A DNA stretch of 64,000 nucleotides from Haliotis cracherodii (GCF_022045235.1 NW_027266275.1:68386001-68450000), one strand, 5' to 3'; shown: positions 129 through 43,384, numbered from the stretch's first letter. Translations and numbers: made by a program. Notes: generated by a model from the sequence alone, not told the origin.

Positions 129-3100
129 CTAAGGGAGACAACTCAAAATTTACATCTGTCATACAACAGAAACAGTCACAGATGTAGAAGGATGTGAAAA
201 GGAATTTGAAATTAATTTATGCCAAATAATCCTCAAAATCATGATGACCATAAGTCTAACTGGTTACCATGGTTACAAATAAAATATTCATCATGTTCAC
301 ATCATCATGATCATAATTGATAAAGGAAAATATCTTACATACAACATACATGTATATACATACCTGACAACACAGAAGAGGTTGATATTTGCGTTATAGA
401 CCGTGAAGTCTATAAACACCGCTCTTGTCCCACGCGTTATCCATAACGAATTGAACAAGTCGTCTATTATTTTCTGCGACTCATTCATGCTGGCCCGGAG
501 ATCCTGAACATACCCTGCTCCGGAGTACGTGGTCAGCAACCCCCAATGTGACGAACCTTCTAGTTCCGATTCCGTTTTATACTTCCACCTACAACAAGGA
601 ACAGAAAGTAAAACATACATCATAAATACAGACACAGAACCCCCAATGGCGACTGTGGTGCCATGTTTCAGATGATGGATTGTTGTCTAAGATCAGAAGA
701 GACGACAGCTTGTTTATTATATGTGAAATCGTCCTCACACCTGACAGAATGTCGAACATGTATCTTACATCAGAATGTCAAACATGCTTTAAACAATTAG
801 TAACATGTGGTTGATCATCGTCAATACTTTACAAGTTTTGCATACACTAAGTCCTTCCATCACCTTTGAATTCATAGGACTGTTTTGAGGTACAGTCACT
901 ATTTTTAACCAACAATTGAAGTGAGCAGTCAGATTACGTCACACAAATGTGACAATATGTGCCATAGCCTTGCAATCATCTGCCCTACCACAGGACCATG
1001 TAACTAATAATAATAACAAACTCGCAGACGTGGATGAAACAAACTCGAAGCCTTTGGCTTCATATGCTACATGGTCCTGTGGCTCTACATACTGTTTCAA
1101 TGTCAGGTGAGGTGAAATTGGGTATAACGTTGTGTCCAAGATTATTCCACTTATATAGCAACGTGTGGCTGCTTGTACTAGTCCGGACTGATGCCAATTT
1201 CTAGAGCTAGCTCACTGAGACCATGTGGTTTAACATGGATATCCCACTCAGACACAGTATACTGACTCCGAGCCAACCAGTCGTTATTTTTGGCCCCTTA
1301 ATGCGCCAGACAGGGTAACAACAAGTACCATCTTTTAACGTCTTTTTGTATGGCACGTCCGGGGATTGAACCTCGGACCTTCCGCTCTCCGGGCAGACGC
1401 ACCACCACTAAACCACGGCGACAGTCTTCAATGTCAGGTAAAGGTAAGGTTTGCAAAGAGTCAATGCACTGAGTTGTTCTTATTTGACTTCTGTGAGTTA
1501 TAAATGGCCTCACACATTTGTCAGCAGATTAAGAAGAAACACACATTGGTACTAAACCAGTCACAGCTGCTTTATGTGATGGAGGAAGATAGGGCATGTA
1601 TACAAACCCGTGAAGTATTAGCAATGGTGGCTGATTGTCCAACATGTGACAGAAACAGACAATATTAACCCCTACCATGTATATTAACTCTAGACATGCC
1701 ACAGAAAATGGGCATTGTTAATGATCAAATTTAACATGGTTAGAAACACATTATGGCATATGGAAGTTCTATGTGTTGCCATATAAAGTTGGATCAATAG
1801 GACAAGTAGCTTGATCTTTTGAATTATTAATACCACACATTCCATCCGTAGAGTATTAGCTCCAGTAAAAACCAGGCTGATCTGGCTAGAGTTATTGTGA
1901 ACCAGGTTTTTCGTTATTTATAAGCAGTCACATACATTCCCAGACAGTCTCACACTCACACTCTGAATTATTAATACCACACATTCCATCCGTAAAGTAT
2001 TAGCTCCAGTAAAAACCAGGCTGATCTGGCTAGAGTTATTGTGAACCAGGTTTTTCGTTATTTATAAGCAGTCACATACATTCCCAGACAGTCTCACACT
2101 CACACTCTGACATTAGCATGGCTAGACAGTCACAAAGTCACAATAAATAAGTCGCGAGTCCCTATCAACCTATGCTTGCCCTACGACTTAATGGATCAGG
2201 TGGCACGGTGACTTGATTGATAGTCTTTAAACATACCCCAAAAATTTTGATTACTGGAAAATCACTTGATTATCTGTCCCGGACTTGAACATTTACAGGC
2301 CATTGTTATATAACTGGAATATTTTCCGAGTGTGGTGAAAAAACAACAAATAATCATAGTCACAATCACCAACATATTCCCAGTTGACACAAACAAAATA
2401 TTCACTAACGTTCTAACATCAACTTAAGTTCCAGTGCCCACTTGCTCAAAGCAATCTTAGCGCTAAGGTGATCGTAACTCCCATACTTTAACATAGGCTA
2501 AGACCACTTTGTGCAAGTGGGCCAAGGCCTACACCTGTCTGAAATGATAAGTATAAATACATACGCAGTGTAGTTGGCAATTTCACTATTGGGATCATAG
2601 TTCCCAAAGGTGTGGGTGTCCTCGATGCTGGTGGAGTAGGAGTCATAGCATTCCTTGATAACATCAGTGAAGTCGTCGTGGACGATGCAGGAGTTGCTGT
2701 GGACCTTCAGGTGTCGGAGTCGGGGCATGCCTAGTAACTTATTTTCGTAGTATATATAACCCAGCTGTTGCTCTGGGACGGCTTCCTTGTTGTACCAGGT
2801 TTCCCAGTAGAGGCCACGGAGCATGGGGCCCTTGGCGAACTATTAAGGAAAAAGCCTTTCTTACAAAAACAAAACACTTTACCGTGAGAGAGATAAAACT
2901 AACTCAGTAGAATGGGCGTACAGTGAGGTATGTCTAACTCAGAGATAAGTCCTTGAATAATGTCTTTATCCGTTTGGGAGCGAGTATGGTTTTAAGACCT
3001 TTTTAGCAATATTCCAGCAATATCACGACGGGGGACACCAGAAATGGGCTTCACCTATTGTACCAACGCCGGGAATCGCACCTGACACTTCGGCATGACG

Positions 3101-11656: not shown

Positions 11657-11716
<60 letters not shown>
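11350..11716. repeat. Compound (TG)-rich repeat plus (TC)n microsatellite
   Basis: Directly visible. Confidence 0.9.
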
Positions 11717-11719
<3 letters not shown>

Positions 11720-14980: not shown

Positions 14981-14988
14981 TATTGTTA

Positions 14989-18284: not shown

Positions 18285-18562
18285 GGGGCACGGGTGGCCC
18301 AGTCGTCTAAGGCCCCGCGATTCGCTGTGCAAAGTTGCGTCCCTTAAGCACGCAAGAAACCTATGATTGTGGGCTCGAATCCCGGTTCGCCCCAATTATG
18401 TTTCTAGGTTTGTCAGCACCATACCCGTTGTCGTGGGTTTCACCGAAGTGGTAAACGTTTGAGACCTGCATCACTTCGGGCTTTCCTCCTACATTAAGCT
18501 GACACGCCGTGATATAACTGGAATACTGTTAAAAGCGATGTAAACCCAACTCACTCACTCAC
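18285..18562 (+). mobile_element. SINE family C, full length, inside Tc1 transposase
   Basis: 14-bp TSD tctcgggcaaagag; tRNA-Leu-like head; (CACT)n tail. Confidence 0.9.
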
Positions 18563-25742: not shown

Positions 25743-25770
25743 TTTCTTGTGTGTTTCAAATCTAAATGTT

Positions 25771-26040
25771 TTGTTTGTTTGTTTATTTGTTGTTTAACGC
25801 CGCACTCAGCAATATTCCAGCTATATGACGGCGGCCTGTAAATAATCGAGTCTGGACCAGACAATCTAGTGATTGACAACATGATCATCGATCCACGCAA
25901 TTGGGGTCGATGACATGCATCAACCAAGCCAGCGAGCCTGACCACTCGATCCCGTTAGTCGCCCCTTACGACAAGCATAGTCGCCTTTTACGGCAAGCAT
26001 GGGTTGCTGAAGACCTGTTGTACCCGGGATCTTCATGGTC
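25771..26040 (-). mobile_element. SINE family B, full length
   Basis: TSD tcaaatc(t/g)aaatgtt. Confidence 0.88.
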
Positions 26041-27107: not shown

Positions 27108-28034
27108 TATCTTACCGATATGTTTGAATATGACATTGTTAAATAATTCAAACAAGTACAACATTGATAGAAAGCAGCTGTTCAAATGAGTTGGGGTTAG
27201 CTTGCGCTGTCACATGACTTGACTCAGAAAAAGCACGCGGCTTTTTGCTTTGAGGCGGGGTATAAAGGCTTTTATTCTGCCTCTCAGAATCCACGTGCAA
27301 CCTGACTTGCACGCGGCGGTGTATAAGAGATTTTTTCCCCCGCTGAGAAATGTATTCCCCTCAAAGGTGGGACACACAGTATTTTATCAAGATCACGTGG
27401 ACCAGTCAGATCTCATCTTTCTGACATGCTGACATGGAGGTATGATAATGCCATTTTCCTGTCAGTGGGCTTTCGAACCAAATTGTTAATTACATTATCA
27501 ATCATTAGACAGTTGGCGACACGAGATGTCTCGACAATGCTTAACCAAAGCCCGGTGCCACACACTGCCCTGTTTTCGCAACAACAACAAAAAAAGTCAT
27601 AATATTTTTTTTTTAAACAAGACACTGTGGCTCGACTTCATATACAATTGAACCTCGTTAGTCCGTAAACCTCGCATTCTAGACGAGCTTGCTTTTTCGC
27701 ACCGTGATTCGTTAATACGGAATGTATTAATTTGAAATAGTTTACTAGGAATCATATAATCTGGATTAATGAGGTTATTGTCACCAGACTGAACAGACAC
27801 ATAAGGCAGTTGTAATCATCAGTATTTTATTATACATGGAATTTAGTCTTCACAAGTATGTTTTTTAATCAGAATAAGTAATCATCACCATGATGTTCCT
27901 GACAATAACAGAAAGTACATATCTATATCACAGAACCGAACTAACTGTATGCGAAAGCGTATTAGTCTTAAGTCCCAGAGTATGTGAATAATTTTGGGTA
28001 ATCAAATTAGCTTGTCGGGTTGGTGTCGAATGGT

Positions 28035-29222
28035 TTACCAATAATTCTTTTCGCCAACATTAATCTTCCAAACGAACATATTAAACGGACCCGTGTCTTT
28101 AAAATCCATTGTATTCTGAAGGAACTTGGGCACGTTATTGACTGTAAAGTAGAGGTGGCCACTGGTGTCGAAAGCAAAGCTGTCAACCCAGTTCATGAGC
28201 GCTTCATCCTTAACCACCTGGGTCTGTGTTGTCAGGGTAACGTCGTCAACAGATGCTGCAATGGCCATGTCCTTGGTGAAATCCCATTTATAGACAGCAT
28301 TCCTATTCAACGCTCCGTAAAACAAACTTTTACTGCCAGCCATCATGCCTCCCGTCTGGGAAACTTTGTCTCCTAGGTTTTTCACAGATCTGCTAATGTC
28401 ACCATTTTCTTGCGCAAGCACTGACGTGGGGACACGATAAAGTTTCATTGACGCCAAGGGGCAGTAGTAGAGGTACCGGGAGTCGGGTGAAAGAGCAATG
28501 CCATTTATCGCTGTTTTTGACATAAATTTCGTGTTGTCAAAATCGATTATGGTAGCTGGGCCGCTCTCTGCTGCCATGCTCTTGTGTGCAAATGTGTACG
28601 ATTTGTCCTTTAGGAAATCATAAACGACAAGTTTGGCTGTTCCAGTATCGGTGATGTAAGCATAAGCAGGCTTTCCTGAAATTTTATGGACCACGATGTC
28701 GTTCAGGTACGTCCGCATCTTTGGAGCGACGGCTTCAGGAAAAGTATGGACTCGGATGACCTTCTTAGCGTTAATATCGTAGATAACTAGTTTAGCGGGA
28801 CACAAGAACTGCCCCGGGTCTGCGATTATATGTAAGCCAGTATCAATAATCCACATCCATCCAGTTGACTGATCAATCTCAAAACTCTGGGCGAACTGGA
28901 TAGCTGAACAGTCACCCACAGTCTGCATGGACCAACTGGGGAAGGGTCTAAGGATTGGCTCCCCTTGCTTCTCCACTATCACATTCACAGCAGAGGGAAC
29001 GCCTTTCTTCGTACGAGGAACCGTCACGTACACACTTTCATTGTAGATCTTTATGCCAGAGAGGAGGTTATTTTTTATGATGAAACTTCCGTTTTTGATG
29101 GATGCTTCTTTGACTGAAGTGCTTGGCCATTCATAGTCTATAGCATGCCACTTATACACAATGGCGGAATCCACTAACTTGTGGCCAAGGATGGTGATCA
29201 GGAGAACTGTAAAGGCCGACAT
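28035..29222 (-). CDS. Yellow/major royal jelly protein family secreted protein, copy 1 (395 aa, intronless)
   Basis: Uninterrupted ORF; signal-peptide-like N-terminus; VTVPR..GVP, LRPFPSW, MWIIDTG, CPAKLVIYDI, YLNDIVV, AYITD, GIALSPD..YLYY..L.S, WVD motifs of the Yellow/MRJP beta-propeller; AATAAA at 27826-27831. Confidence 0.93.
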   Translation of the reverse strand: MSAFTVLLITILGHKLVDSAIVYKWHAIDYEWPSTSVKEASIKNGSFIIKNNLLSGIKIYNESVYVTVPRTKKGVPSAVNVIVEKQGEPILRPFPSWSMQTVGDCSAIQFAQSFEIDQSTGWMWIIDTGLHIIADPGQFLCPAKLVIYDINAKKVIRVHTFPEAVAPKMRTYLNDIVVHKISGKPAYAYITDTGTAKLVVYDFLKDKSYTFAHKSMAAESGPATIIDFDNTKFMSKTAINGIALSPDSRYLYYCPLASMKLYRVPTSVLAQENGDISRSVKNLGDKVSQTGGMMAGSKSLFYGALNRNAVYKWDFTKDMAIAASVDDVTLTTQTQVVKDEALMNWVDSFAFDTSGHLYFTVNNVPKFLQNTMDFKDTGPFNMFVWKINVGEKNYW

Positions 29223-30193
29223 GTTCAGAGTCGCAAACTGGAGAGTCTGGGCTGGTCGCAGTCGTAAGCTGGACTGTCTGGTCTGCTCACGGTCGTAAGC
29301 TGTATACTCTGGGGTGGTGTCATCTGCTGTAGGTCCACACCTTAGCTAGTAGCTGCGCAATGACACAAACTATTTTCAGCACCATTGTCGCAGCATTGTC
29401 TTATCTCCAGGTGCTAAGAACTAGCATAGTGTCGTGTTGATTGCATTCAGCTTAGAATTGTAAAGTCATCCTGATACAATTACGCAACTATTTAACATAA
29501 AAGAATCATAAAAAATACAAAAGATAACAGGTTAAATTGACACAGAGGATTGGCAAAACATTTTAAAACATAGTCATGGAAAGTACATATTTAGACCCCA
29601 AAAGAGTCATATGTCTAAAAGTCTAAAAGGCATCAAACAACTGCCCTGATCCCACCACCATCTCGTATGTCAGCCGAAATGACAGACTTGGAGGCCCCGC
29701 GGCCCAGAATACAATCTTACACACATTGCCAATGGTATGTGCTTTATAAATTGTAAATGTACACTTATCATGAATTCTGTGAAGTCACATTGCATTAATC
29801 ATGAAATTTACAATTGGATCGCCTTAAAAAAAAAGTACATCTTGATGACACTGAGTATAACATAACGGGACATTAAGCTACAAACCCATAGGATTCTGCC
29901 CTGATGAAAATCTTCGATACTATGTCTATATCATGAATGTACACCAACCATGGAATTTCATTCATATCATTAACTTCCTTTAAATGAAAATGGCTAAACC
30001 TTTCAAAAGTTTTTCTATTTCTGGTTGACATCAAATCTATCAGCTTCTGTCTTGATGGATAACGATGATAGTACGTCGGTAACAACATAGCTCTGCTTGG
30101 CCTGTAGTAGAGACAAACCAGGAAAAAATGGTATTCATTTTCGATTTCCATCAAGTTACATTTATCACAAATTACACATCTCAAATCATATAC

Positions 30194-30375
30194 AGGGCGG
30201 TCGGGTAGCCTAGTGGTTAAAGCGTTCGCTCGTCACGCCAAAGACCCGGGTTCGATTCCCAACATGGGTACAATGTGTGAAGCCCATTTCGGGTGTCCCC
30301 CGCCATGATATTGCTGGAATATTGCTAAAAGCGGCGTAAAACCATACTCACTCACTCACTCACTCACTCACTCAC
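30194..30375 (+). mobile_element. SINE family A, full length, young
   Basis: tRNA head GGTAGCCTAGTGG...GGTTCGATTCCC; (CACT)n tail; TSD tcaaatcatatac. Confidence 0.92.
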
Positions 30376-30656
30376 TCAAATCATATACTGTTTTACTCTA
30401 ACGTCGCATTTGTATTTTCAAACAATGTGATAAACACCGAAACTTAGCAAGTATTCTCATAAGATCTTTATTAAATGTGATGATATATATTATGCAGGGT
30501 CGAGAAATACAGAAGTATTTATCTTTTGATACAGCTGCTATACTCATAAAATAAGATTCATCCTCAAACTCCTGGGATATCCAGACGTATGAGAATCCTG
30601 TTTGGAATAAAACATTTTAACATGTGACGCCCAGTTTACTCCTCTATTGTCCACAT

Positions 30657-30868
30657 GGGGGGCGCGGGTGGCCCAGTCGTCTAATATCACGGCGTGTCAA
30701 CTTAATGTGGGAGGAAAGCTCGAAGTGATGCAGGTCTCAGACGTTTATAATTATCACTTCGGTGAAACCCACAAGCACGGGTATGGTGATGACAAACCTA
30801 GAAACCCGGGGATTACAATCATAGGTTTCTGGCGTTTCTGGCGCGAATCGCGGCGCCTTAGACGACTC
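30657..30868. mobile_element. SINE family C with internal inversion
   Basis: Head on plus 30657-30684, body on minus 30685-30868. Confidence 0.75.
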
Positions 30869-31934
30869 GTATTTTTCTAAATTTAACTCTTTATTCCTCT
30901 ATTGACAAAAACATTCTTATGCCAATAGCTTTTTTGTAGGTCAACAACTGAATTCTGACACCAAAACAGTATCATCTGCAAACAACAACATCTTGATGAC
31001 ATCAATCATATCAGTTACAAAAATATCATTTGTTTCACTCTCCATCACATCAGTAGCCAACTGGTAAATGAAAAATATAAAAAGTAAACGACTAAGCATA
31101 CAACCCCATGACGTTGAAAAGATACCACTTCTCGAATTTCCTAAGTGTACACAAGCACAACCATTTCTGTAATACTTTCTAAAACATTATAAATTTTACC
31201 ATGAATACCTTTCTGTAATAACATATACAATAACTTATTCCTATCAACCTTATCAAAGGCTTTACAGAAATCAAAGGAAAGCTGCATAAAAGGGTTTAGG
31301 CTTACGTAAGTATTTCTGAGATGTTATCTATCGTAGACCCTTTCTATCAGTTCATTTAATTCTAATCAATATCACAGTCTCGACCCATGATCAACTATTG
31401 ATGTAAATACTTTCCCCATGATATTAAGTATAGACATTCCACTGTAATTGTTTGGGTCACTCCTATTACCTTTTTCAAATAAAGGTGCAATTATTCCAAT
31501 ATTCCAATGATCAGGGAATACAGGCTGATCTATATAGTGAGTGTTTCATAATTTTGAAAAGCATTCATAAACCATCCATACCCGGAGATTTTCCAGACTT
31601 TGAGAAATTGGCAGCTACTTTAATTTCTTCTTCTGTAATTTCCCCTGACAACAATTCATGCGAGTTGTTGCACTCAACTCAAGTGTCTAAATCATGATCT
31701 TTTAAAATTCCGCTACTTTTATTCAAATTTAATACAATCTACAAACTAAGGATTTAATATCTCAAAATATAAATAACAGCTGTTAAGGGATATAGTGTTG
31801 TCACTTTCACTATTTTACCCAACAGCACAATTTATCTTTTCACTTTCTAATTTATGAAATATGTTCAGTCCAGTTACACATGTTCTTCGGAAATCTCCTT
31901 TAGCCTGCAGATAATTATTCAAGGTTTCAGAACT

Positions 31935-32156
31935 TTTCCCATCTGTACCATACCCAAGGCTCGTTCACGTTGTTCGACTGTGAGTCGTGGCATTTGTTGT
32001 GTGTGTTTTTTGTCACTGTGGATGTCTGACTTGCCGTTGCAATCGTTTTATACCCTTACCCGCGCGTGCATTTGCAGTTGTTCGTGGTGCACGTGTTTTT
32101 CACTTTTTCGCGTGTTATATTTTCAGTCGGTAAAGTTTCTTTTGGGCGTCAGTTTA
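31935..32156 (-). mobile_element. Tc1-like transposon 5' fragment
   Basis: MPRLTVEQRERALGMVQMG transposase N-terminus; TIR-like aactgacgcccaaaagaaac. Confidence 0.7.
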
Positions 32157-33080
32157 TTAAAAAAACAGGATAACTGATATAAATGAAAATGTGTTAGCCA
32201 TAGATTTACACCAACATGTATTTTTTCATTCTCTCTCTCTCTCTCAAGTGGCTGTATCAGATTCCACCTCATATGCTTCAAATGATATGGCGTCGCCCAG
32301 TGAAAACAATTTCATCGATAATCAAGCTCTACATTGTACTAAACAACATGAAAAGATTTGGAAAATATCTGTTGATGCTAAGTTGTGAGTATAAATGCTT
32401 TGCAAATCCTGCAATTGAACGAAATCTGCACGGTAGTTTACGAACCGGAATGTCGAATTCGTTACGCGATTTTGATTGGACTATGCATATACTCATTAGT
32501 CCAGCCAAAATATAACTCCATAGTTCCATCCTAGTTCGGCAATGGTGGAAACTGGACTTTTATAGTCAGCTAACTCCCTTGCCTCGGGAAGGTGATTTAT
32601 AAAGTACATCACCTTTAAATGGTTTAGTTGCATACAACAGATTCAACTCAGATTATTACTGAATTTCAAGGCACCATAATTTGCTAGGATCTGTTCAATC
32701 CCAAATAGAATTAACTTCGTTTATAATTCGATCGTGAGTTCGAATCCCAGAACATCTCGAGGCGAACCCGGATTCCTACTCACTCTGCACAGCGAGTTTC
32801 GGCGCCTTAGACGACTGGACCAACTCTAATCCTCAGTATTTCATTATCCAAATTATTTAGTCTTCACAATGATGTATCGTTTAGGAATCAGAATAAGTAA
32901 GTAACGCCAATGTTTTAGGTTTATTAAATAGGTTTTATAACAATGCTACCGGGTAGAGAATGTTCATATGTATATTACGAAGCGAAAACTAACTGAAGTT
33001 TGTGAGTCATATGTCCCAAAACACGTGAATAGTTTGGGGTTAACAGAATTCATCTTGGTGTCAGTTTGATGCGGAAAGGT

Positions 33081-34280
33081 TTATAAATAATTTCTTTCAT
33101 CAACATAAATCTTCCAAATGAACATATTAAATGGCGCCGTGGCATTAAAATCCATTGTATTCTGAAGGAAGCTTGGCAGTTTGTTTACTGTAAACCAGAG
33201 GTAGCCATAGGTGTCGAAAGCTAAGCTGTCAACCCATTGCATGTACGAGTCATCCTTTGCCACAAGAGGTTGTGTTGTCAGGGTAACGTCGTCAACAGAC
33301 GCCGCCATGGCTATGTCTTTGGTGAAGTCCCATTTGTAGACAGCATTCAAACCCAACGCCCCGTAATATAAACTTTTACTTCCAACTATCATGCCTCCCG
33401 TCTGGGAAACTTTGCTTCCAAGGTCTTTCACAGATCTGCTAATGTCACCATTTTCTTGTGCAAGCACTGACGTGGGAACACGGTAAAGCTTCATGGATGC
33501 CAAGGAACAGTAGTAAAGATACCGTGTGTCGGGAGAAAGACCAATGCCATCTATCGGTACGTCTGTCTTAAATTGAGTATGGTCAAAATCGATTATGGTA
33601 GCTGGGCCGCTCTCTGCTGCCATGCTCTTGTGTGCAAATGTGTACGATTTGTCCTTTAGGAAATCATAAACAACTAGTCTGGCTGTTCCTGCATCCGTGA
33701 TGTAAGCATAAGCAGGTTTTCCTGAAACTTTATGGACCACGATGTCGTCCAGGAACGTCAGCATCTTTGGAGCGACGGCTTCAGGAAAATGATGAACTCG
33801 AATAACCTTGTCCGTGTTTATATCGTAGATAACTAGCTTAGGGGGACATATGAACTGCCCCGGGTCGGCGATTGAGTGTAAACCAGTGTCAATAATCCAC
33901 ATCCATCCAGTTGAAGGATCAATCTCAAGACTCTGAGAGTACTGGATAGCTGAACAATCACCCACTGTCTGCATGGACCAACTGGGGAAGGGTCTAAGGA
34001 TTGCCTCCCCGTCCTTCTCCACTACTACATTGAGAGTGGACGGAACCCCTTTCCTCCATCGAGGAACCGTCACGTACACACTTTCATTGTAAATCTTAAT
34101 GCCTGCGATGATGTTATTTGTGATGATGAAACTTCCATTTTTGATGAATTCCTGTTTGACTGAACTGTTTGGCCATTCATAGTCTACAGCATGCCACTTA
34201 TACACAATGGCGGAATCCACCAACCTGTTTCCAAGAAGTGCGATCAGGAGGATTTTGCATGCAGACATGCTTACAGGCAT
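33081..34280 (-). CDS. Yellow/MRJP family secreted protein, copy 2 (399 aa, intronless)
   Basis: Uninterrupted ORF; VPRWRKGVPSTL, MWIIDTG, CPPKLVIYD, IDGIGLSPD, WVD; AATAAA at 32920-32925. Confidence 0.94.
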   Translation of the reverse strand: MPVSMSACKILLIALLGNRLVDSAIVYKWHAVDYEWPNSSVKQEFIKNGSFIITNNIIAGIKIYNESVYVTVPRWRKGVPSTLNVVVEKDGEAILRPFPSWSMQTVGDCSAIQYSQSLEIDPSTGWMWIIDTGLHSIADPGQFICPPKLVIYDINTDKVIRVHHFPEAVAPKMLTFLDDIVVHKVSGKPAYAYITDAGTARLVVYDFLKDKSYTFAHKSMAAESGPATIIDFDHTQFKTDVPIDGIGLSPDTRYLYYCSLASMKLYRVPTSVLAQENGDISRSVKDLGSKVSQTGGMIVGSKSLYYGALGLNAVYKWDFTKDIAMAASVDDVTLTTQPLVAKDDSYMQWVDSLAFDTYGYLWFTVNKLPSFLQNTMDFNATAPFNMFIWKIYVDERNYL

Positions 34281-34809
34281 GAGTTGGACTGTCTGGGTTG
34301 GTCACAGTTTTGAGCTTTATGGTTTGGTTTGGTGCCACCTGCTGTGGGTCCACACCTTAGCTAGCAGTTGTGGGTTGCGCAGTGATATAAGCTATTTTCA
34401 GTCGCAACATTGTCTTATCTCCAGGAGCATGAGAACAAACATCGTGTCATCTCAAACTTGTAACGTCATCATGATAAAATTATGTAGCTATTCAACATGA
34501 TAACAATCTTTAAAGAATACAAAAGATAACAGATTAATATTGACACAGAGGATTGGCAAAACTTTTTAAAACAAGTTAAATAGTCATACAAAGTACACAT
34601 TCATACACCATCATATGTTATTTCAAAGCAACAAACAACTGGCCTGATATCACCACCAGCTCGTATGTATATCGAAATCCTGGCTTCAGGCCAAGCGGTA
34701 GCTGTGATGTCATAGTGGAGAGTCGTCGCCATTTTCATTTGTTTTCAGTGCATTAATTTAAGTACATGACAAGCAAGTGATTTCCCTTTCACAGCGTATT
34801 TTGACGCGA

Positions 34810-35030
34810 AATGGGATACCGTGTTTCATTAGGGACGTTCATTTCTTCAAATCTCAAACGAAAAAGCCGATTTATTGAGGAAGAAAGTTTTGATACAATG
34901 ATGTCAGAGTGGACAAAAGAAATGGGAATTGACTGGATATGCCGCTTAGTAGTCCTTGCATTTTGAGGCGTCTATCTATGAGAGATCTCCAGACAAACCA
35001 AAAGAACTTGGTTACGAAACTAGATTCTCC
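34810..35030 (+). mobile_element. Possible decayed THAP-domain transposon fragment
   Basis: Frame with W.....SLHFEASIYE resembling the THAP C-x-x-H-F region, interrupted by stops. Confidence 0.25.
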
Positions 35031-35265
35031 ATTCGTTGTTAAAAATAATCGATGACTTACTATCATCGTACAACATTTACAAAGGACCATGCAAATTGAT
35101 CACATGCAAGGGCAATATATACCCTCGTCAAAGTATAGCATCACCAAATGTAAAGTTTCATTTACAATGTAGAGATTTTTTAACAAGGTGCATCTGCTTG
35201 TAGAATGGTAGCCACCTTAACTGCCTAAACTTCTGGGTGCGTGTATGTGAGCCGTATGCCTGTGT

Positions 35266-35408
35266 GTCTGTTTGTTGTTTTATGCCGCACCCAGCAATAT
35301 TCCAGCTATATGAGGGCGGTCTCTAAATAATCGAGTCTGGACCATACAATCCAGTGATTGATATCATGACCACCTGATCCCGTTATTTGCCTCTAACTAC
35401 AAGCATAG
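35266..35408 (-). mobile_element. SINE family B (internally deleted)
   Basis: cagcaatattccagctatat...gagtctggacca. Confidence 0.75.
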
Positions 35409-35409
35409 C

Positions 35410-35955
35410 ACACCTGAGGGTTCTCATTAGAGAAATTCGTGTTTGATGACAAATGCACACCACTGATTGTAGAAGAACTCTTGAGGCAAAGAGGAACATC
35501 TCATCATCAGTGCAACATCCAGGAAACAGTGGCGTTGGCATGTGGTGGCGGCTCAGTGATGGTATGGGGATGTTGCTCCTTTGATTGTAAACTTGATTTG
35601 GTTACAGTTCTGGGACATTTAGTGAACAAAGGTACTAAGATAACACATTGGACGGTTTTGTTGTGCCTCATTTTGATAACCATGCACTTGTCACACATTC
35701 TGTCTTCATAGATGATAATGACCGACCCAAACGAGCACGAGCACGAGCACGAGCTGTGACTGACCATCTCTACATCAATGCCATGGCCTCTGCCTTGGCC
35801 TTCCTGAAGCCAAGACCTGAATCCAGTCGAGCATCTCTATGCGATCAGTTGGGACGTTGGGTGAGCAAGGGACTCTGTACAGAAGAACTGACCCAGGTAT
35901 TGTTTCAGGAATGGCAACACTTTCCTCAGTTGAGGATCAGGCGTCAGATACTGAC
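35410..35955 (+). mobile_element. Tc1/mariner transposase DDE fragment
   Basis: GGGSVMVWGC, FIDDNDRPKRAR, PWP...DLNPVEHL..QLGR with frameshifts. Confidence 0.85.
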
Positions 35956-35978
35956 TTAAACTAGTGATCATTTAGGAA

Positions 35979-36152
35979 ATAAACCTACTGTGTTTTGAAA
36001 TTTGATGTAGTACCACTGTAGAGTAGATACCTCTTTAGTAGATACCGAGCGCTTAGCAAGAGGTTCCAAATTACAATAAAGAGGTATCTACTCTTCAGTG
36101 GGACTACATCAAATTTCAAATCACAGTAGGTTTATCTCCATTCTACCATGAC
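35979..36152. repeat. Long hairpin related to the 19203 element
   Basis: 59-bp arms 35979-36037/36077-36135 followed by ctccattctaccatgac. Confidence 0.8.
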
Positions 36153-38435
36153 GGCAACAATGCTTTGAAAACGGTGCTCTCTTGCAACGCGTAACAACAC
36201 AGGTACACAGGTCCGCAATTATAGAACATTGCGAAAAGTGGTCACAGGTAGTTATATATGTAACAATTATTATCAAAGTTGAAGATTAAAAACACCATAG
36301 TCGTGAGTAGTTCAAAATAAGTGTTCAAAACACATAGTTTTTCAAAAGAAGTTGACAAATAACACTCTAAAAATTAGTCCAAAGACAGCTGTTTTAATTT
36401 CTACCAACCTTCTGTACACTGTTGTACACTGTGGACTCACGGTTTTAAAATGCTAAACGAATATATTTTTACAACAAACTTTTTGAATTAACATTCTCCT
36501 ATGCATTTAACATGTGTAAGTGTTATTAGTTAGTTAGCAATTACCCCCAGTAAACTATATTAACATCAAAATATATGCCTCTCCACCCCGACCCTGGATG
36601 TGGCAGAACTTGACCTACATCACGTTTACTCACACCTGGCAGCTGTCAATGGCTGACAATCTTGTGCTTACATTCTCCGTTGCTAGTAAAATGAAGCAAG
36701 ATGACAACCCCGATCTATGATATGGTTCAACATTAACCTGTAGATTTACTGGGAATGGTCGAGCCTGCAGGTACAAAATGATTACCAATGCAACTGAGTA
36801 TGACTGAACAGCCGCTTTTTAGCCTGCCGACGAGCCGGACATTTTGACACGAGGTAGGTCCTATCTCTGTATCTGCATGGTGTGACCTGTCAATTTCAAG
36901 ATTTCATGGATCCAAAGCCAGATAGTGACAGACCTTAGATATTAGCGGCCCAGAAATAGTGGTTCATATATGATTTTCTTTATTGTGCGTGTTCTGAAAT
37001 GAATTTCATCAAGTTTGATAAGCTGTCACTTCAGTTGGGACATTGTTTTCGTGGACGTTCGAAGGGGAGTGTTTTCTGATGGACTTTCAAATCCCCTCCT
37101 GTCAAATTCTAACGGTGGTGGTTGATGGAGATTGCAACACATATCGATCACAAAAAGGTTTGTAAACAACATGTTGTCATGAATAAAATTTCTTCATACA
37201 GTTTGTATAATGTTATATTTTACTTTCATTATCAGTTGTTTCAATGAGGAAATAGCTAAAATTGTACCGATTCTGGTCACCATAGAACATTTCCCAAACA
37301 GTTTCATGAACATTTCATGTGTATGCAAAAGATATGCTACATATCTTTCCTGATTATCAAAAAATGGTGGTGGTACGATACTTTTGACGAGGTGTATATT
37401 TGGCTCAGTTTCAATGTACATAAATTCACATACTCTGTTCATGGTCTTGCATACTTGAAACGCTTGTGTGTGTCTGATTCTGCAGGAAAGGCCTCTCTTA
37501 TTATATTCGCAAAACATGCAGGATAAACGTTTCCACATTTTAAGGAATTCTTTGGTAAAATAGACTTAGCATTGAAAATCTTCTGTACACTTAGTGGAAT
37601 AAGGTTCTCTGAAATCCTCAAAGTGAGGAACAGCTAACTACAAGCCAGTCACCCCACCCCCCACCACCCCCACCCCACCCCCCAAAAAAACTCCCGCTAT
37701 CAGCAGGGGTCCTCTTGCCAGCTTCCCTGGTGTGTCATAGCTGATTAATGACCACAAGCTCTTCTGTTACAGACGACGTGTGTGTGTCCAGAAAATAATT
37801 CTCTGCTTTTAAAATATTGATCTTTGGTTATTTTCAACCACTTTCGAAACATTTAAATGATCTGCAGATTAAAAAAAGATGTTGGTCAACTTGTAGATAA
37901 CCCATTTAAATTTAGATTTATTGTTTGTAACACAAAGGCTTTATTAATGCTTTCAAAAGCAGGCAAGACATATTACAAAGTATAACTCTCTTGCCATGAA
38001 ACATTTATACAGTTGGTTGTGTATGAAAATATCAAAAGTACAGTAGACATTGATGAATAATTAAAACAAATGTTCATAATTTACAAATCAAGTGGGTTTT
38101 TTATATGAAGCAGAAACAGTATATACTAACTGGATTCAACATTTGGCATAATAAGAAATATCTTTAAAGAGCTATAGCGTGTTCATAAACCTGCAGGTGC
38201 AATGTACATCATGTTACTGCCCAGTACTTCAAAGCACGTGGTGCACGTGGTGCACGTGGTATTCTGGTACAGTCATGTAGATGCGAGAAGTTCAGTTAAA
38301 ACAAACTGTATAGGAATAGTTTCATATTCGTTTTCCTTTCATGTAAATACCATAGTCACCCCTATTTTTTTTCACTTTGATGGTTAAGTTTGGGGTAAAA
38401 CGAACCATCTTGTCGTCAGTTTGATGTCGAATGGT

Positions 38436-39635
38436 TTATAAATAACTCTTTTCATCAACATAAATCTTCCAAATGAACATATTAAAGGGCGCCGTGGCAT
38501 TAAAATCCATTGTATTCTGAAGGAAACTAGCCAGTTTATTTACTGTAAACCAGAGGTAGCCATTGGTGTCAAAAGCAAAGCTGTCAACCCATTGCATGTT
38601 CAAGTCATCTTTTGCCACCACAGTCTGTGTTGTCAGGGTAACGTCGTCAACAGATGCTGCCATGGCTATGTCCTTGGTGAAGTCCCATTTGTAGACAGCA
38701 TTCAAACCCAACGCCCCGTAAAACAAACTTTTATTTCCAGATATCATGCCTCCCGTCTGGGAAACTTTGCTTCCAAGGTTTTTCACAGATCTGCTGATGT
38801 CTTCATTTTCTTGCGCAAGCACTGACGTGGGAACACGGTAAAGTTTCATGGATGCCAAGGAACAATAGTAAAGATACCGTGTATCGGGAGAAAGAGCAAT
38901 GCCATCTATCGGTATATCTGTCTTAAATTGAGTGTGGTCAAAGTCGACCATACTCGGTGGACCACTCTCTGCTGCCATGCTCTTGTGTGCAAATGTGTAC
39001 GATTTGTCCTTTAGGAAATCATAAACAACTAGTCTGGCTGTTCCTGCATCCGTGATGTAAGCATAAGCAGGTTTTCCTGAAATTTTATGAACCACGATGT
39101 CATTCAGGAACGTCAGCATCTTTGGCGCGACGACTTCAGGAAAATGATGAACTCGAATAACCTTGTCCGTGTTTATATCGTAGATAACTAGCTTAGGGGG
39201 ACATACGTACTGCCCCGGGTCGGCGATTGAGTGTAAGCCAGTGTCAATAATCCACATCCATCCAGTTGAAGGATCAATCTCAAGACTCTGAGAGTACTGG
39301 ATAGCTGAGCAGTCACCCACTGTCTGCATGGACCAACTGGGGAAGGGTCTAAGGATTGCCTCCCCGTCCTTCTCCACTACTACATTGAGGGTAGACGGAA
39401 CCCCTTTCCGCCATCGAGGAACCGTCACGTACACACTTTCATTGTAAATCTTAATGCCTGAGATTAGATTATTTGTGATGATGAAACTTCCATTTTTGAT
39501 GAATTCCTGTTTGACTGAACTGTTTGGCCATTCATAGTCTACAGCATGCCACTTATACACAATAGCGGAATCCACCAACCTGTTTCCAAGAAGTGCGATC
39601 AGGAGGATTTTGCATGTAGACATGCTTACAGTCAT
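38436..39635 (-). CDS. Yellow/MRJP family secreted protein, copy 3 (399 aa, intronless)
   Basis: Uninterrupted ORF, very similar to copy 2; FLNDIVV, IDGIALSPD, WVDSFAFD. Confidence 0.94.
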   Translation of the reverse strand: MTVSMSTCKILLIALLGNRLVDSAIVYKWHAVDYEWPNSSVKQEFIKNGSFIITNNLISGIKIYNESVYVTVPRWRKGVPSTLNVVVEKDGEAILRPFPSWSMQTVGDCSAIQYSQSLEIDPSTGWMWIIDTGLHSIADPGQYVCPPKLVIYDINTDKVIRVHHFPEVVAPKMLTFLNDIVVHKISGKPAYAYITDAGTARLVVYDFLKDKSYTFAHKSMAAESGPPSMVDFDHTQFKTDIPIDGIALSPDTRYLYYCSLASMKLYRVPTSVLAQENEDISRSVKNLGSKVSQTGGMISGNKSLFYGALGLNAVYKWDFTKDIAMAASVDDVTLTTQTVVAKDDLNMQWVDSFAFDTNGYLWFTVNKLASFLQNTMDFNATAPFNMFIWKIYVDEKSYL

Positions 39636-39741
39636 GAGTTGGACTGTCTGGGTTGGTCACACTCGCAGACTGGGTTGGTGCCATCTGCTGTGGGCCCATA
39701 TCTTATCTATTAGCTGCTGAATGTTATTCTGAAATAAACTA

Positions 39742-40503
39742 TATACAAAGAAATAAGTTAAGCACCACTGGAAATATTAACACTGACCTATCCCTAATCG
39801 CAACAACAGTAAATTTCGTGATGAATAAGTTAAGAATAGTGTTCCGTGGAACAGTCTAATGGCAATTATGACGTCTCGTCGCAGCACGACATGCACGTGC
39901 AGGATGCCACCCATTTTTTTCAAAACGCAGTATCTTTACCTCGCAATTGTGAGAACTTACTGTCTTGCATTGTTGAAGCATTCTGTGAACATGGCACGAA
40001 GAAGGTTATCAGATGTGCAAAGGTGGCTTATGGCATGACAGACATGACCTACAAAAGCATATGACGTCAACTAGGGTATCATTACACCGTAATAAGCAGA
40101 CTGGTACGAAACACGGGCAAACCAATGCGGTACAGAATCTCCCACGATCAGAAATACTTCAAATGAGAGTTTACCCGCGATTGATGATTTGTGTCAAGAA
40201 TGTCATCCTTGGACAGAAAATTACATTTTTCATCATCCATGTGATGTGGAATTGTGTTCCAGAGTCTGCACCTCCATACTTATTGTGGTTAACGTTTTTG
40301 CACTAATACAGTTTTTGTTAGAATTATGATTAAAATCTTAAAACAGGATAAACTTTTTATGTTTTCTTATTGTCAGGGGTGTCTTCTTCCAAACCACATT
40401 AATTTTTCCCAGGTTATGTAAACAGGGTTTCAACCTCAACGCTTGTACGACTGACCAATCATTGTAAAACATATATGTGGTGCTTAACTTTTTTCGTTGT
40501 GTA
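39742..40503 (+). mobile_element. Internally deleted Tc1/mariner element upstream of yellow copy 3
   Basis: TIR TACAAAGAAATAAGTTAAGCACCAC / CACAACGAAAAAAGTTAAGCACCAC, TA TSD; frameshifted HTH remnant VISRLV..GQTNAVQNLPRS; empty site aactattttcag seen upstream of copy 1. Confidence 0.85.
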
Positions 40504-41143
40504 TATTTTCAGTACCATTGTCGAAATGTTGTTTTATCTCCAGGGGTATGAGACTAACACTGTGTGGTGTTGATTGCCTCAAATTTAGAATTCTAAAATC
40601 ATCACGATAAAAGTATCTATGAACTCATCATACAAAAAGACAGGGGTGGATGTTTGCTTGGATCTAATAAATCACAAACACACGAAGCCTCCATTATAAC
40701 TCGATCGTGGATTAGAATTCCAGAATTGCCCTGATTACGATTCTCTGGTTGTCAGAACGAGATTCGTATTCGTTGGTTCCACCGAAGTGATAAACCTCTA
40801 CGACCTGCATCACTTCGTGAATTCCTCCCACCCTAAGCTGACACACCGTAAAGTAACTTAACTACTGTTCAAAGTGGTCTCATACCAAACTCAATCTCTA
40901 TAAAGAAAGGGAAAATAAACTCAGAGATACTGCAGAGATTGTCGGCCTCCTCTTCCATTTGCCTATTTTCAGCTACAAACGTTCAGGGAAAGCCTATTGC
41001 TGTACTATATATTACACGTATAATCTAAAGCACCCAAATTGAACTGCATAAATAATTATAGAAAAGAGTCCCTTGGGGCTACTTTTATTGCAGTGATGTC
41101 TGTATTGATACATAGTACATGCAAAAATATTCAATACAAAGCT

Positions 41144-42337
41144 TCAGTTGGTTCCAAGGTACCCATTGTCGTCCAAATATAGTTTCCATATGAACATGTT
41201 AGGATTGGAGAAGTTCATCGTTTGACCAAAGAAGCTTCCAAGATTATTCGCTGTGAACCAGAGTGAACCTTCATTGTCGAAACCAAAGGTGTCGACCCAT
41301 TTCATCCGCTGGTCATCATGAGCAACCATAACCTGAGAGGTCAAAGTTATGTCATCCGGTCCCCCCGCCATGTTCTGATCCTTCATGAAATTCCATTGGT
41401 ACACACCGTTTGAACTAAGCGCACTATAATACATGAACTTCTTCCCAAATGCCATACCATCAGACTGAGATTGTTTAACACCGACTTTGTGGACAGATTG
41501 CTGGAACAGGCCTTTAGGGTTGGAGAGAACAGTTGTGGGAATTCGGTACAAGCTCGTACCTGCTAAAGCAGAGTAATACACGTACCTGAAGTCAGGTGAC
41601 ATGGCAATGCCATCTATGGGAACTGTCTGTGGGTAGGACTTGTTGTCAATATGAACAATAGAAGTTGGTGGAGATTCTGCTAACATACTGCTGTCAGCAA
41701 AACTGAAAGATTTGTCAGACCGGAAGTCGTAGGTCACTATACGTGCTTGTCTAGCATCACTGATGTACGCAAGGGCAGCTTGACCAGCCACTCGGTGGAG
41801 GACGATGTCGTTCAGGAAGGAGGACCTTGCTGCAACATGATCAGGGAAGTAATGGGTGCGGACTACACGTCTACGGTTGATGTCGTAGATGATAAGTTTA
41901 GGAGGGCAGATCGTCTCTCCGGCATCAGCAATTCTTCCAATTCCAGTGTCAATGATCCACATCCATCCCGTCAAGGGGTCTATCTCCATGCTCTGGGAGT
42001 ACTGGATGGCGGTGCAGTCCCCTACAGTCTGCATGGACCAGCTGGGGAAGGGTCTGAGGATGTGTTTCCCGTGTTTCTCAGTGACGACATTCAGCGTAGA
42101 AGCCACACCTTTCTTCCATCTAGGAACTGTGACGTACACGCTACCGTTGTACACCTTCACGCCGGCGATGAGGTTATTTTCGAGCACAAAACTGCCATTC
42201 TTGATAAACTCCTGTTTCACACGGTCACTCGGCCAGTCATACTCTAATGATGTCCATTGGTACACCAGTGATGAATGACCAACTCTTTGACCAAAGGTGT
42301 TTACAAGACACAGACCAAGGATTATCAAGCTGAACAT
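41144..42337 (-). CDS. Yellow/MRJP family secreted protein, copy 4 (397 aa, intronless, most divergent)
   Basis: First ATG at 42337 (the track start at 42367 is TTG); signal peptide MFSLIILGLCLVNTFG; VPRWKKGV, MWIIDTG, FLNDIV, IDGIAMSPD, SQSDGM, WVDTF; AATAAA at 41084-41089. Confidence 0.94.
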   Translation of the reverse strand: MFSLIILGLCLVNTFGQRVGHSSLVYQWTSLEYDWPSDRVKQEFIKNGSFVLENNLIAGVKVYNGSVYVTVPRWKKGVASTLNVVTEKHGKHILRPFPSWSMQTVGDCTAIQYSQSMEIDPLTGWMWIIDTGIGRIADAGETICPPKLIIYDINRRRVVRTHYFPDHVAARSSFLNDIVLHRVAGQAALAYISDARQARIVTYDFRSDKSFSFADSSMLAESPPTSIVHIDNKSYPQTVPIDGIAMSPDFRYVYYSALAGTSLYRIPTTVLSNPKGLFQQSVHKVGVKQSQSDGMAFGKKFMYYSALSSNGVYQWNFMKDQNMAGGPDDITLTSQVMVAHDDQRMKWVDTFGFDNEGSLWFTANNLGSFFGQTMNFSNPNMFIWKLYLDDNGYLGTN

Positions 42338-42498
42338 TGTGTTTGTATGTAACACAGGATCACACAATGACTTGAGTCTATGAAATCGTTATCAGCCCCT
42401 GTGTTGTAGGTCAGTGGATCCCGAGAAACGTGTTGTTTTGTCATGTTTCCAGTTTATTATATCGCTCTTTCCCATTCGTTGTTATAGCTCCGTTTTGG

Positions 42499-43110
42499 AG
42501 TGAGTGAGTTTGGTTTAACATTATTCCAGTTATATCACGGCGTGAAAGTTAAAATAAGAGCTAAGACCGAAGTGATGCAGCTCTCAGACGCTTACCACGA
42601 CGCTGAACCCCACCAGCCTAGAATCCTAATCGGGGCAAACCAGGATTTTAACCACTTATCATGTGTTTCTGGCGTGTCCAGGGACGCACCTCTGTACAGC
42701 GAATTGTGGCGTCTCAGACGACTGGACCACCCTGTACTCCAGCTCCGTCCAGGAAGAGATTGAGTATGGTTTTACGCCGCTTTTAGCAATATTCCAGCAA
42801 TATCACGGCAGAGGACACCGAAATGTGCTTCACACAATGTGGGAAATTGAACCTGGGTCTTAGGTGGTACGAGGCAACGCTTTAACCACCAACCCCTGTC
42901 CAGGAAGTGACAGCTCAACAATATCAGCAGCTTTCCACAGAACTTCTCCCGCAGACGCATTTCAAATCAACCAATCAAAATGAGTTTGAACAGCGGTGTG
43001 TCAGCGTGATGTGTGAGGAAAGCCAGATGTGATGCAGGTCTCAAACATTTACTATTTCGATGAAACAAACGAGCACCGATATCGCGCTGACACACTTGAA
43101 ACCATAATCA
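42499..43110 (-). mobile_element. Run of SINEs: C (42499-42735), A (42760-42897), C fragment (42985-43110)
   Basis: Homology to full-length copies elsewhere in the window. Confidence 0.75.
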
Positions 43111-43384
43111 GAGAGATAACAATAATGGTTTGTCTTTTGAAATCCGATAGGAATTCCTATTTCACAATGTCTTTCGAAAAGTTGCATCTTCTTGTGATTT
43201 GTAGAGAAGTGGAAATACATTATTCACCGTTTTGCAAGGAAATTGTTCATCTGGGACAGGAAGCCCCGTGTATCGAACAGATTTTGCGTCCATAATTTTA
43301 AATGAACACTGACATTTTGATTATAGCTTAAACAGTCCTTTCGTGAGAAGGTATGCAGGTATGCAGCAGAGCTCACATTTCTAA

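What the first reader, a model, noticed from the sequence alone, without database searches (positions are those of the whole stretch)
28035..42337. Tandem array of four intronless yellow/MRJP genes in an apparently molluscan genome
Seen: four intact 395-399 aa ORFs, co-oriented, each with a signal peptide, conserved Cys pair (GDC...CP), N-glycosylation sequons (NGS, NES/NGS) and poly(A) signals, lying between intron-rich PKD2 and BAIAP2 genes. Established: Yellow/MRJP six-bladed beta-propellers are best known from insects (melanin and dopachrome conversion, royal jelly, amine-binding sand fly salivary proteins) and bacteria, with patchy occurrence elsewhere. Inference: an independent expansion, analogous to the bee MRJP array, of a secreted catecholamine/melanin-handling family that could act in shell or mantle pigmentation, mucus or immunity. 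The lack of introns fits retroposition or horizontal acquisition.
Basis: partly seen in the sequence, partly recalled or inferred. Interest (0 to 1): 0.85.

Follow-up and report, generated by a model that had tools for sequence, protein, structure and literature searches.

The report
Abalone tandem yellow/MRJP gene array
Four intact, intronless, secreted yellow/MRJP beta-propeller genes do sit in tandem on an abalone chromosome, but this lineage-specific expansion of an old lophotrochozoan family is already annotated and was published in 2019, and it is not a horizontal transfer.

Summary
Four co-oriented single-exon ORFs lie on the minus strand: 28035-29222, 33081-34280, 38436-39635 and 41144-42337 (395-399 aa). 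All match Pfam MRJP PF03022 (E 1e-36 to 1e-43). A confident model of Y3 (pLDDT 93) folds as the six-bladed propeller of Aedes dopachrome-conversion enzyme, MRJP1 and LJM11. The left neighbour is PKD2-like. The claimed BAIAP2 neighbour was not confirmed.

The genome is a Haliotis, most likely H. cracherodii. All four proteins are already in NCBI and UniRef. H. rufescens has 1:1 orthologues (96-98% identity) on one contig.

In a tree rooted on bacteria, the abalone genes nest inside a lophotrochozoan clade. The Y4-versus-Y1-3 split and the Y1 split predate the Haliotis radiation sampled here. dN/dS of 0.19-0.38 and transcript-like contigs from three studies (a fourth run looks partly genomic) indicate working genes.

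Recent HGT is refuted. There are no retrocopy hallmarks at the locus.

Rosani et al. 2019 (PMC6678240) already reported intronless lophotrochozoan yellow genes. For H. discus hannai they listed six genes, including a 3-gene intronless cluster and one gene next to polycystin-2.

Function (dopachrome conversion or small-ligand binding) remains inferred. A shell-melanin role is weakened because no melanin was detected in H. asinina shell. Verdict: ordinary and already known.

The parts
28035..29222 (-). Y1, yellow/MRJP gene, 395 aa, single exon. 97.7% identical to H. rufescens XP_046353615.2. Sister to H. rubra P0005.
33081..34280 (-). Y2, yellow/MRJP gene, 399 aa, single exon. 96.0% identical to H. 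rufescens XP_046354219.2.
38436..39635 (-). Y3, yellow/MRJP gene, 399 aa, single exon. 93% aa identity to Y2 (dS 0.16). AlphaFold model pLDDT 93, six-bladed propeller. Transcript-like contigs cover 38128-39634.
41144..42337 (-). Y4, divergent yellow/MRJP gene, 397 aa, single exon (57-58% identity to Y2/Y3, 52% to Y1). The whole CDS lies in one colinear transcript-like contig (41097-42356).
27813..29670 (-). Extent of DNA homology between the Y1 and Y2 units (78% identity with 32827-34668). It includes about 220 bp 3' and about 450 bp 5' of the CDS.
38387..39709 (-). Extent of DNA homology between the Y3 and Y2 units (92.6% identity with 33031-34363). It covers only the CDS plus about 50 nt 3' and about 75 nt 5'. 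The intergenic DNA is unrelated.
27826..27831 (-). AATAAA signal 204 nt after the Y1 stop.
32920..32925 (-). AATAAA signal 156 nt after the Y2 stop.
41084..41089 (-). AATAAA signal 55 nt after the Y4 stop.
29225..29318 (-). 31-nt x3 tandem repeat immediately upstream of the Y1 ATG (5' leader).
300..2839 (-). Two exons of a PKD2-like (polycystin) gene, the left neighbour. Polycystin_dom matches at 300-686 and 2501-2839.

Best explanation
This is a four-gene tandem array of functional, secreted yellow/MRJP (PF03022) six-bladed beta-propeller proteins on an abalone chromosome, most likely Haliotis cracherodii.

It arose by repeated local DNA-level duplication of the intronless yellow gene that is reported as typical of lophotrochozoan genomes. 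The Y4-versus-Y1/2/3 split and the Y1 split predate the Haliotis radiation sampled here. The Y2/Y3 split predates the H. cracherodii-H. rufescens divergence. A fifth close copy (Y5, contig C80) and a sixth divergent copy (Y6, contig C1) lie on other chromosome-scale contigs.

Shown here: family membership, fold, intactness, purifying selection, conservation of the array in a sister species, and transcript-like contigs.

Inferred only: biochemical function. By homology to Aedes dopachrome-conversion enzyme, and because molluscs other than cephalopods lack DCT/TYRP2 (PMC6678240), at least one paralogue plausibly converts dopachrome to dihydroxyindole in extracellular melanisation (my estimate about 35%). 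Other paralogues may instead bind small catechol or indole ligands in the propeller tunnel, as sand-fly yellow-related proteins do.
For: Four intact ORFs. PF03022 at E 1e-36 to 1e-43. PDB sequence hits to MRJP1 (9e-33) and Aedes DCE (1e-24). AlphaFold pLDDT 93.2, pTM 0.91; Foldseek TM 0.80 to 9w1k, 5yyl and 7asd, and 0.72 to 3q6k.

Tree of 70 proteins rooted on 9 bacterial homologues: Lophotrochozoa clade SH-aLRT 98; Haliotis clade 100 with two subclades at 100; Y1 + H. rubra at 100; Y2 + Y3 at 95.

All four proteins are already held by NCBI and UniRef. H. rufescens has 1:1 orthologues at 96-98% identity, all on one contig. Pairwise dN/dS is 0.19-0.38.

Contigs from four runs of four studies cover the Y3 and Y4 gene bodies. 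In three of them the 39.7-40.6 kb spacer is essentially uncovered, and the contigs are colinear with the genome.

The genome holds six MRJP loci, none interrupted by stops. That matches the six genes listed for H. discus hannai: a 3x intronless cluster, one intronless gene next to polycystin-2, and two others (PMC6678240 supplementary file 3).
Against: No biochemical or tissue-level data were obtained. The run kinds were 'RNA? (a guess)', and one run (X2) also covers intergenic DNA, so transcription is likely but not proven.

Yellow proteins with and without DCE activity cannot be told apart by sequence (stated in PMC6678240). The LJM11 ligand-contact Asn342 aligns by eye with N366, a residue conserved across the family, so it does not discriminate.

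The abalone genes are not orthologues of the insect DCE genes: the arthropod sequences form a separate clade.

That point rests on the paper.
Confidence: 0.85

Rival explanations
1. The genes were acquired by abalones through recent horizontal transfer from bacteria (or a protist), which would explain the absence of introns.
For: The genes are intronless. The family has a patchy distribution, with bacterial members in 10 of 301 sampled genomes of one phylum. Foraminiferal and protist sequences sit next to the lophotrochozoan clade.
Against: The nearest relatives are other Haliotis (75-98%), then chiton, caenogastropod, bivalve and annelid sequences (42-48%). Bacteria sit across a long, well-supported branch. 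GC and GC3 are ordinary for coding DNA of this window. The array is conserved in H. rufescens. Homologues are already reported in most lophotrochozoan phyla (PMC6678240).
Confidence: 0.01
2. The copies at this locus, or at least Y3 and the C80 copy Y5, are retrocopies of a spliced parent mRNA.
For: All copies lack introns. Y2/Y3 homology is confined to the CDS plus about 50 nt 3' and about 75 nt 5', and it ends at an A8 run. Y5 on another chromosome-scale contig shares only the CDS plus about 160-195 bp on each side.
Against: No direct repeats of 7 nt or more flank the Y3 unit. Y1/Y2 homology runs about 450 bp upstream of the ATG, beyond a plausible transcript start. Co-oriented copies at 3-5 kb spacing are the signature of unequal crossing-over. 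No intron-bearing parent exists in this genome: all six loci are uninterrupted. An intronless yellow gene is reported as general in lophotrochozoans (PMC6678240), so any retroposition would have to be ancient.
Confidence: 0.05
3. The proteins are non-enzymatic secreted binders of small amines or indoles (as in sand-fly LJM11), or structural or nutritive proteins (as in bee MRJPs), rather than dopachrome-converting enzymes.
For: The fold matches LJM11 and MRJP1 as well as DCE. The paralogues have diverged (52-93% identity) under moderate constraint, as expected if ligand specificities diversified. No melanin was detected in H. asinina shell.
Against: The top structural match is Aedes DCE, though only narrowly ahead of MRJP1. 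Gastropods lack DCT, so some enzyme must fill that step if they make DHI-melanin (PMC6678240). There is no direct evidence either way.
Confidence: 0.3
4. The four copies are an assembly artefact, for example haplotigs or collapsed or expanded repeats.
For: Y2 and Y3 are 92.6% identical at DNA level.
Against: The copies differ by 7-48% at protein level and have unrelated intergenic DNA. Each has its own orthologue in H. rufescens. Independent run contigs match Y3 and Y4 separately.
Confidence: 0.01

Closest known systems
Haliotis discus hannai DCE/yellow genes (Rosani et al. 2019, Genes 10:495, PMC6678240)
   Same: The same family in the same genus, with six genes per genome. It has an intronless cluster (3x) plus an intronless gene next to polycystin-2, and the paralogues cluster by species.
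   Different: Here the chromosome-level assembly joins the cluster and the polycystin-adjacent gene into one four-gene array. It also shows 1:1 orthology with H. rufescens. This is a refinement, not a new kind.
Aedes aegypti dopachrome conversion enzyme (PDB 9w1k) / Drosophila yellow-f, -f2
   Same: PF03022 domain and six-bladed propeller (TM 0.80, 25% identity). Secreted and glycosylated.
   Different: Not orthologous: the arthropod sequences form a separate clade. Enzyme activity is untested in any mollusc protein.
Apis mellifera MRJP tandem array (MRJP1, PDB 5yyl/7asd)
   Same: A lineage-specific tandem expansion of a yellow gene. Best PDB sequence hit (E 9e-33).
   Different: This is an independent expansion. 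The bee genes have introns (my own knowledge, not tested here), and several carry a C-terminal repetitive region that is absent here. A nutritional role is not implied.
Sand-fly yellow-related salivary proteins (LJM11, PDB 3q6k)
   Same: The same fold with a central ligand tunnel. The Asn342 equivalent (N366, aligned by eye) is conserved.
   Different: Only 20% identity. The other hydrogen-bonding positions (Thr327, Phe344) are not conserved (V/W and L here, aligned by eye). Amine binding is untested.

Membership tests
Yellow/MRJP family (Pfam PF03022) | MRJP domain scoring above Pfam's gathering threshold | tested here: met
   All four score 124-149 bits against a cut-off of 19.8.
Yellow/MRJP family (Pfam PF03022) | Six-bladed beta-propeller fold shared with MRJP1, DCE and LJM11 | tested here: met
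   Y3 model pLDDT 93.2. Foldseek TM 0.79-0.81 to 9w1k, 5yyl and 7asd, and 0.72 to 3q6k.
Yellow/MRJP family (Pfam PF03022) | N-terminal signal peptide (secreted protein) | tested here: inconclusive
   A hydrophobic N-terminal stretch is followed by a V-D-S / A type site in Y1-Y3 and by H-S-S / L in Y4. The model has a low-pLDDT helix at residues 4-16. No signal-peptide predictor was available.
Yellow/MRJP family (Pfam PF03022) | Conserved cysteine pair in the N-terminal blades | tested here: met
   C109 and C145 (Y3 numbering) are present in Y1-Y5 and at least 90% conserved in 55 homologues. Disulfide geometry was not measured.
Dopachrome-conversion enzymes (insect yellow-f/f2, Aedes DCE) | Orthology with the biochemically characterised insect DCE genes | tested here: not met
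   Haliotis genes lie in a lophotrochozoan clade. Hymenopteran sequences annotated 'dopaminechrome tautomerase' lie in a separate arthropod clade.
Dopachrome-conversion enzymes (insect yellow-f/f2, Aedes DCE) | Catalysis of dopachrome to 5,6-dihydroxyindole | not testable with these tools
   No published catalytic-residue set was found in the library. This needs an enzyme assay.
Processed retrogenes | Poly(A) remnant, flanking target-site duplications, and homology limited to the transcript of an intron-bearing parent | tested here: not met
   No TSD of 7 nt or more around Y3. Only an A8 run. Y1/Y2 homology extends about 450 bp upstream. There is no intron-bearing parent in the genome.
Recently horizontally transferred genes | Nearest relatives in a distant donor lineage, and absence from related animals | tested here: not met
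   Nearest relatives are molluscs and an annelid. Bacteria are the distant outgroup.

The most novel reading that the evidence does not exclude
The abalone-specific expansion (Y1-Y5) may have been recruited to a non-melanin chemistry. One possibility is handling indole-type or other non-melanin shell or epipodial pigments: the reference list of PMC6929474 cites Comfort 1949 on an 'indigoid' blue shell pigment in H. cracherodii. Another is secreted ligand scavenging in mucus or immunity, with different paralogues tuned to different small molecules. This would be the first functional diversification of yellow proteins outside arthropods.
Probability: 0.07. Interest if true: 0.55.

Novelty: already known. 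Interest (0 to 1): 0.15.

Why it matters
As it stands it matters little. The genes are already in NCBI and UniRef, and the family's presence, intronless structure and clustering in Haliotis were published in 2019.

The modest added value is threefold. A chromosome-level view shows that the reported '3x cluster' and the 'polycystin-adjacent gene' form one four-gene array. There is evidence of 1:1 orthology with H. rufescens and of purifying selection. And the HGT and retroposition ideas for this locus can be clearly rejected.

The open question is which reaction or ligand mollusc yellow proteins serve, given that gastropods lack DCT. This locus makes that question neither easier nor harder to test than the already published ones do.

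Tried and rejected
1. The look-up of encoding contigs, meant to fetch orthologous loci from other Haliotis, chiton, scallop, Owenia and amphioxus for intron and synteny checks, was closed. Intron status outside this genome and PKD2 synteny therefore rest on PMC6678240 and its supplement.

2. The search for related loci on genome contigs gave a single doubtful 2.5-kb MAG contig (L007), and its genome has no PF03022 hit. Bacterial outgroups were taken instead from a 301-genome phylum sample. One call with a wrong 'of' argument failed.

3. BAIAP2 check: the IMD family search hit only C2, plus one very weak hit at C12:3.2 Mb. Fourteen right-flank ORFs and three left-flank ORFs without a match gave no Pfam family. 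A broader scan of 161 short right-flank ORFs was listed but not sent, because it would have needed a very long typed list. The right-hand neighbour therefore remains unidentified.

4. A search for DCE catalytic residues found no paper on PDB 9w1k in the library. The LJM11 ligand residues (PMC5094789) were mapped by eye on the HMMER alignment and proved uninformative.

5. The search of earlier findings returned nothing for this place or for the words tried.

6. The Y4-Y3 fusion protein modelled in H. rufescens was checked here. An in-frame TGA in the Y3 leader blocks it, and no such joint was listed among the laid contigs, although 31 joints were not shown.

7. No complex-prediction job, metagenome scan or the search of protein representatives was run. 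None would have changed the verdict.
Full report
**Observation.** The window holds exactly four long ORFs of this family, all on the minus strand:
- Y1: 28035-29222, 395 aa
- Y2: 33081-34280, 399 aa
- Y3: 38436-39635, 399 aa
- Y4: 41144-42337, 397 aa from the ATG

A tblastn of the four proteins against the window finds no further fragments or pseudogenes.

The Cys pair is present in all copies (C109 and C145 in Y2/Y3 numbering) and is at least 90% conserved over 55 homologues. The NGS and NES/NGS sequons are there. Canonical poly(A) signals follow Y1, Y2 and Y4, but none lies within 400 nt of the Y3 stop. The N-termini look like signal peptides, and the structure model has a low-confidence helix at residues 4-16. 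No dedicated predictor was available.

**Family and fold.** All four match Pfam MRJP (PF03022) with E 1e-36 to 1e-43, against a 19.8-bit cut-off. By sequence they hit solved structures of MRJP1 (9e-33), Aedes aegypti dopachrome conversion enzyme (1e-24), sand-fly LJM11 (2e-9) and a cyanobacterial homologue. An AlphaFold2 model of Y3, built on a 55-sequence alignment, has pLDDT 93.2 and pTM 0.91. Foldseek places it with 9w1k (DCE), 7asd/5yyl (MRJP1) and 3q6k (LJM11) at TM 0.72-0.81. Membership in the yellow/MRJP family is secure.

**Whose genome, and is it annotated?**
- The closest named proteins are 'protein yellow-like' or 'major royal jelly protein-like' from Haliotis cracherodii, H. asinina and H. 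rubra.
- The genome (1.18 Gb, 80 contigs) has six MRJP loci: the four here, one on C80 (Y5) and one on C1 (Y6). None is interrupted by stops.
- Y5 is identical to the RefSeq H. cracherodii protein P0002. The window therefore most likely comes from black abalone; this is an inference.
- All four window proteins are already held by NCBI and UniRef.
- H. rufescens has one-to-one orthologues on a single contig: 97.7% to Y1, 96.0% to Y2, 96.2% to Y3 and 98.2% to Y4.

**Neighbours.** On the left, two minus-strand exons (300-686 and 2501-2839) match the Polycystin domain, so the PKD2-like neighbour is confirmed. On the right, BAIAP2 is not confirmed. Its defining IMD domain occurs in this genome only on contig C2, plus one very weak hit (E 7) at C12:3.2 Mb, about 65 Mb from the window. 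Fourteen right-flank ORFs have no Pfam match.

**Anatomy of the array.**
- Self-comparison shows that the units share little beyond the genes. Y2/Y3 are 92.6% identical over 33031-34363 versus 38387-39709, that is, the CDS plus about 50 nt 3' and about 75 nt 5'. Y1/Y2 are 78% identical over 27813-29670 versus 32827-34668, about 220 nt 3' and about 450 nt 5'. Y4 aligns only within the CDS (67-69%).
- The intergenic DNA is unrelated and rich in interspersed repeats.
- No direct repeats of 7 nt or more bracket the Y3 unit, and only an A8 run lies at its 3' homology edge.
- Co-orientation, 3-5 kb spacing and upstream homology between Y1 and Y2 fit unequal crossing-over followed by turnover of the spacers. 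Gene conversion between Y2 and Y3 is possible. They do not fit retroposition.

**Evolution.** I built a maximum-likelihood tree (IQ-TREE, LG+C20+F+G4, quick search) of 70 proteins, rooted on nine bacterial homologues taken from a 301-genome sample. It gives:
- a lophotrochozoan clade (SH-aLRT 98) holding chiton, bivalve, caenogastropod, heterobranch, annelid (Owenia) and all Haliotis sequences;
- arthropods (Collembola plus Hymenoptera) as a separate clade (98);
- amphioxus and foraminiferal or protist sequences outside these two clades;
- bacteria across a long branch.

Haliotis is monophyletic (100) and splits into a Y4-type clade (Y4, three H. asinina genes, one H. rubra gene) and a Y1/2/3/5-type clade, both at 100. 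Y1 pairs with an H. rubra gene (100). Y2 pairs with Y3 (95). Since H. rufescens has separate orthologues of Y2 and Y3, that last duplication predates the split of the two species.

Pairwise dN/dS is 0.19-0.38. dS is 0.16 for Y2-Y3 and 0.33-0.43 among the other pairs of Y1, Y2, Y3 and Y5; it is saturated against Y4. This is a birth-and-death family under purifying selection. It is an expansion independent of the bee MRJP array, and it is not a recent foreign acquisition.

**Expression.** Four runs from four coded organisms and four studies were laid on 37300-43200. All four cover the Y3 and Y4 gene bodies.
- One 1260-nt contig (X1) spans 41097-42356, the whole Y4 CDS, colinear with the genome.
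- In X3, contigs tile Y3 from 38128 to 39634.
- In X1 and X11 the 39.7-40.6 kb spacer is uncovered, and in X3 nearly so.
- X2 also covers the spacer, so it may contain genomic DNA.

The run kinds are guesses and contigs cannot give strand or level. Transcription without CDS introns is therefore likely but not proven.

**What is already published.** Rosani et al. 2019 (Genes 10:495, PMC6678240) reported:
- DCE/yellow genes in most lophotrochozoan phyla;
- clusters in Lingula, Mizuhopecten and H. discus hannai;
- species-wise clustering of paralogues.

Their supplementary table lists six H. discus hannai genes: a 3x intronless cluster, one intronless gene flanked by polycystin-2, one intronless gene between a rho-GTPase gene and a MYM zinc-finger gene, and one gene with one intron. 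That is the same picture as here, four in the array plus two elsewhere. The better assembly simply joins the cluster and the polycystin-adjacent gene.

**Function.** Nothing in the sequence separates a dopachrome-converting yellow from a non-enzymatic one, and the 2019 paper says so itself. No paper on the 9w1k active site was found. Of the three LJM11 residues that hydrogen-bond serotonin (Thr327, Asn342, Phe344; PMC5094789), only the Asn aligns by eye with a conserved residue (N366), and that residue is conserved across the family.

The most likely mechanism is inferred, not shown. These are secreted propellers that act on, or bind, catechol- or indole-type small molecules. At least one paralogue plausibly supplies the dopachrome-to-DHI step that gastropods cannot get from DCT. 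I put about 35% on true DCE activity and about 30% on a pure binder or another role.

The shell-melanin idea is weakened by mass spectrometry, which found no eumelanin or pheomelanin in H. asinina shell. It also found none in Pecten and Mizuhopecten shells, although these scallops have many yellow genes (PMC6929474 Table 1).

**Limits.** I therefore could not re-derive intron structures or synteny in other molluscs. The right-hand neighbour remains unidentified.

Noticed in passing
L006:1405-2802 (+) = G000:C1:29180357-29181754: The sixth yellow gene (Y6, 465 aa, about 38% identity) is also intronless. It carries a Thr-rich stalk and a hydrophobic C-terminus, suggesting a GPI- or membrane-anchored yellow protein. 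It sits on a long branch next to the Owenia fusiformis (annelid) protein, although Annelida were reported to lack yellow genes in 2019.
   Followed up: partly
L003:1498-2688 (-) = G000:C80:38794721-38795911: The fifth copy (Y5, 396 aa, 84% identity to Y3) lies on another chromosome-scale contig and is identical to the RefSeq H. cracherodii protein P0002. It shares only the CDS plus about 160-195 bp on each side with Y1/Y2.
   Followed up: partly
window 39636-39725 and 41144-41146; protein P0124: The H. rufescens RefSeq model XP_046354205.2 (811 aa) fuses the Y4 and Y3 orthologues through the Y3 leader. In this window an in-frame TGA 24 nt upstream of the Y3 ATG blocks that reading, and no such splice was listed among the laid contigs. 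It is probably an annotation artefact or a species-specific read-through.
   Followed up: partly
window 14985-15250, 25770-26039, 44736-44924, 13240-13428, 35254-35380; L003:472-709 and 2888-3138; L006:507-764 and 3375-3632: An abundant interspersed repeat of about 260 bp brackets the whole array. It also flanks both Y5 and Y6 as inverted pairs. Its density is about one copy per 7 kb in the window, so this may be chance.
   Followed up: no
window 42422-43200 and 40649-40845: Sequence immediately upstream of Y4, and in the Y3-Y4 spacer, is covered at enormous summed depth (up to about 360,000) with many rearranged joints in all four runs. It is a very high-copy, probably transcribed repeat family.
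   Followed up: no
window 9547-11750 (+) and 56300-57950 (+): Long 'ORFs' of up to 505 aa here are products of strongly skewed tandem or low-complexity repeats (GC skew -0.36 and AT skew +0.50), not genes.
   Followed up: no
window 17746-18363 (+): Two adjacent open frames read like remnants of a Tc1/mariner-type transposase, judging by a DNARPH-like motif seen by eye. This was not tested against Pfam.
   Followed up: no
window 29225-29318: A 31-nt x3 tandem repeat lies in the leader directly upstream of the Y1 start codon. It is absent from Y2-Y4.
   Followed up: no
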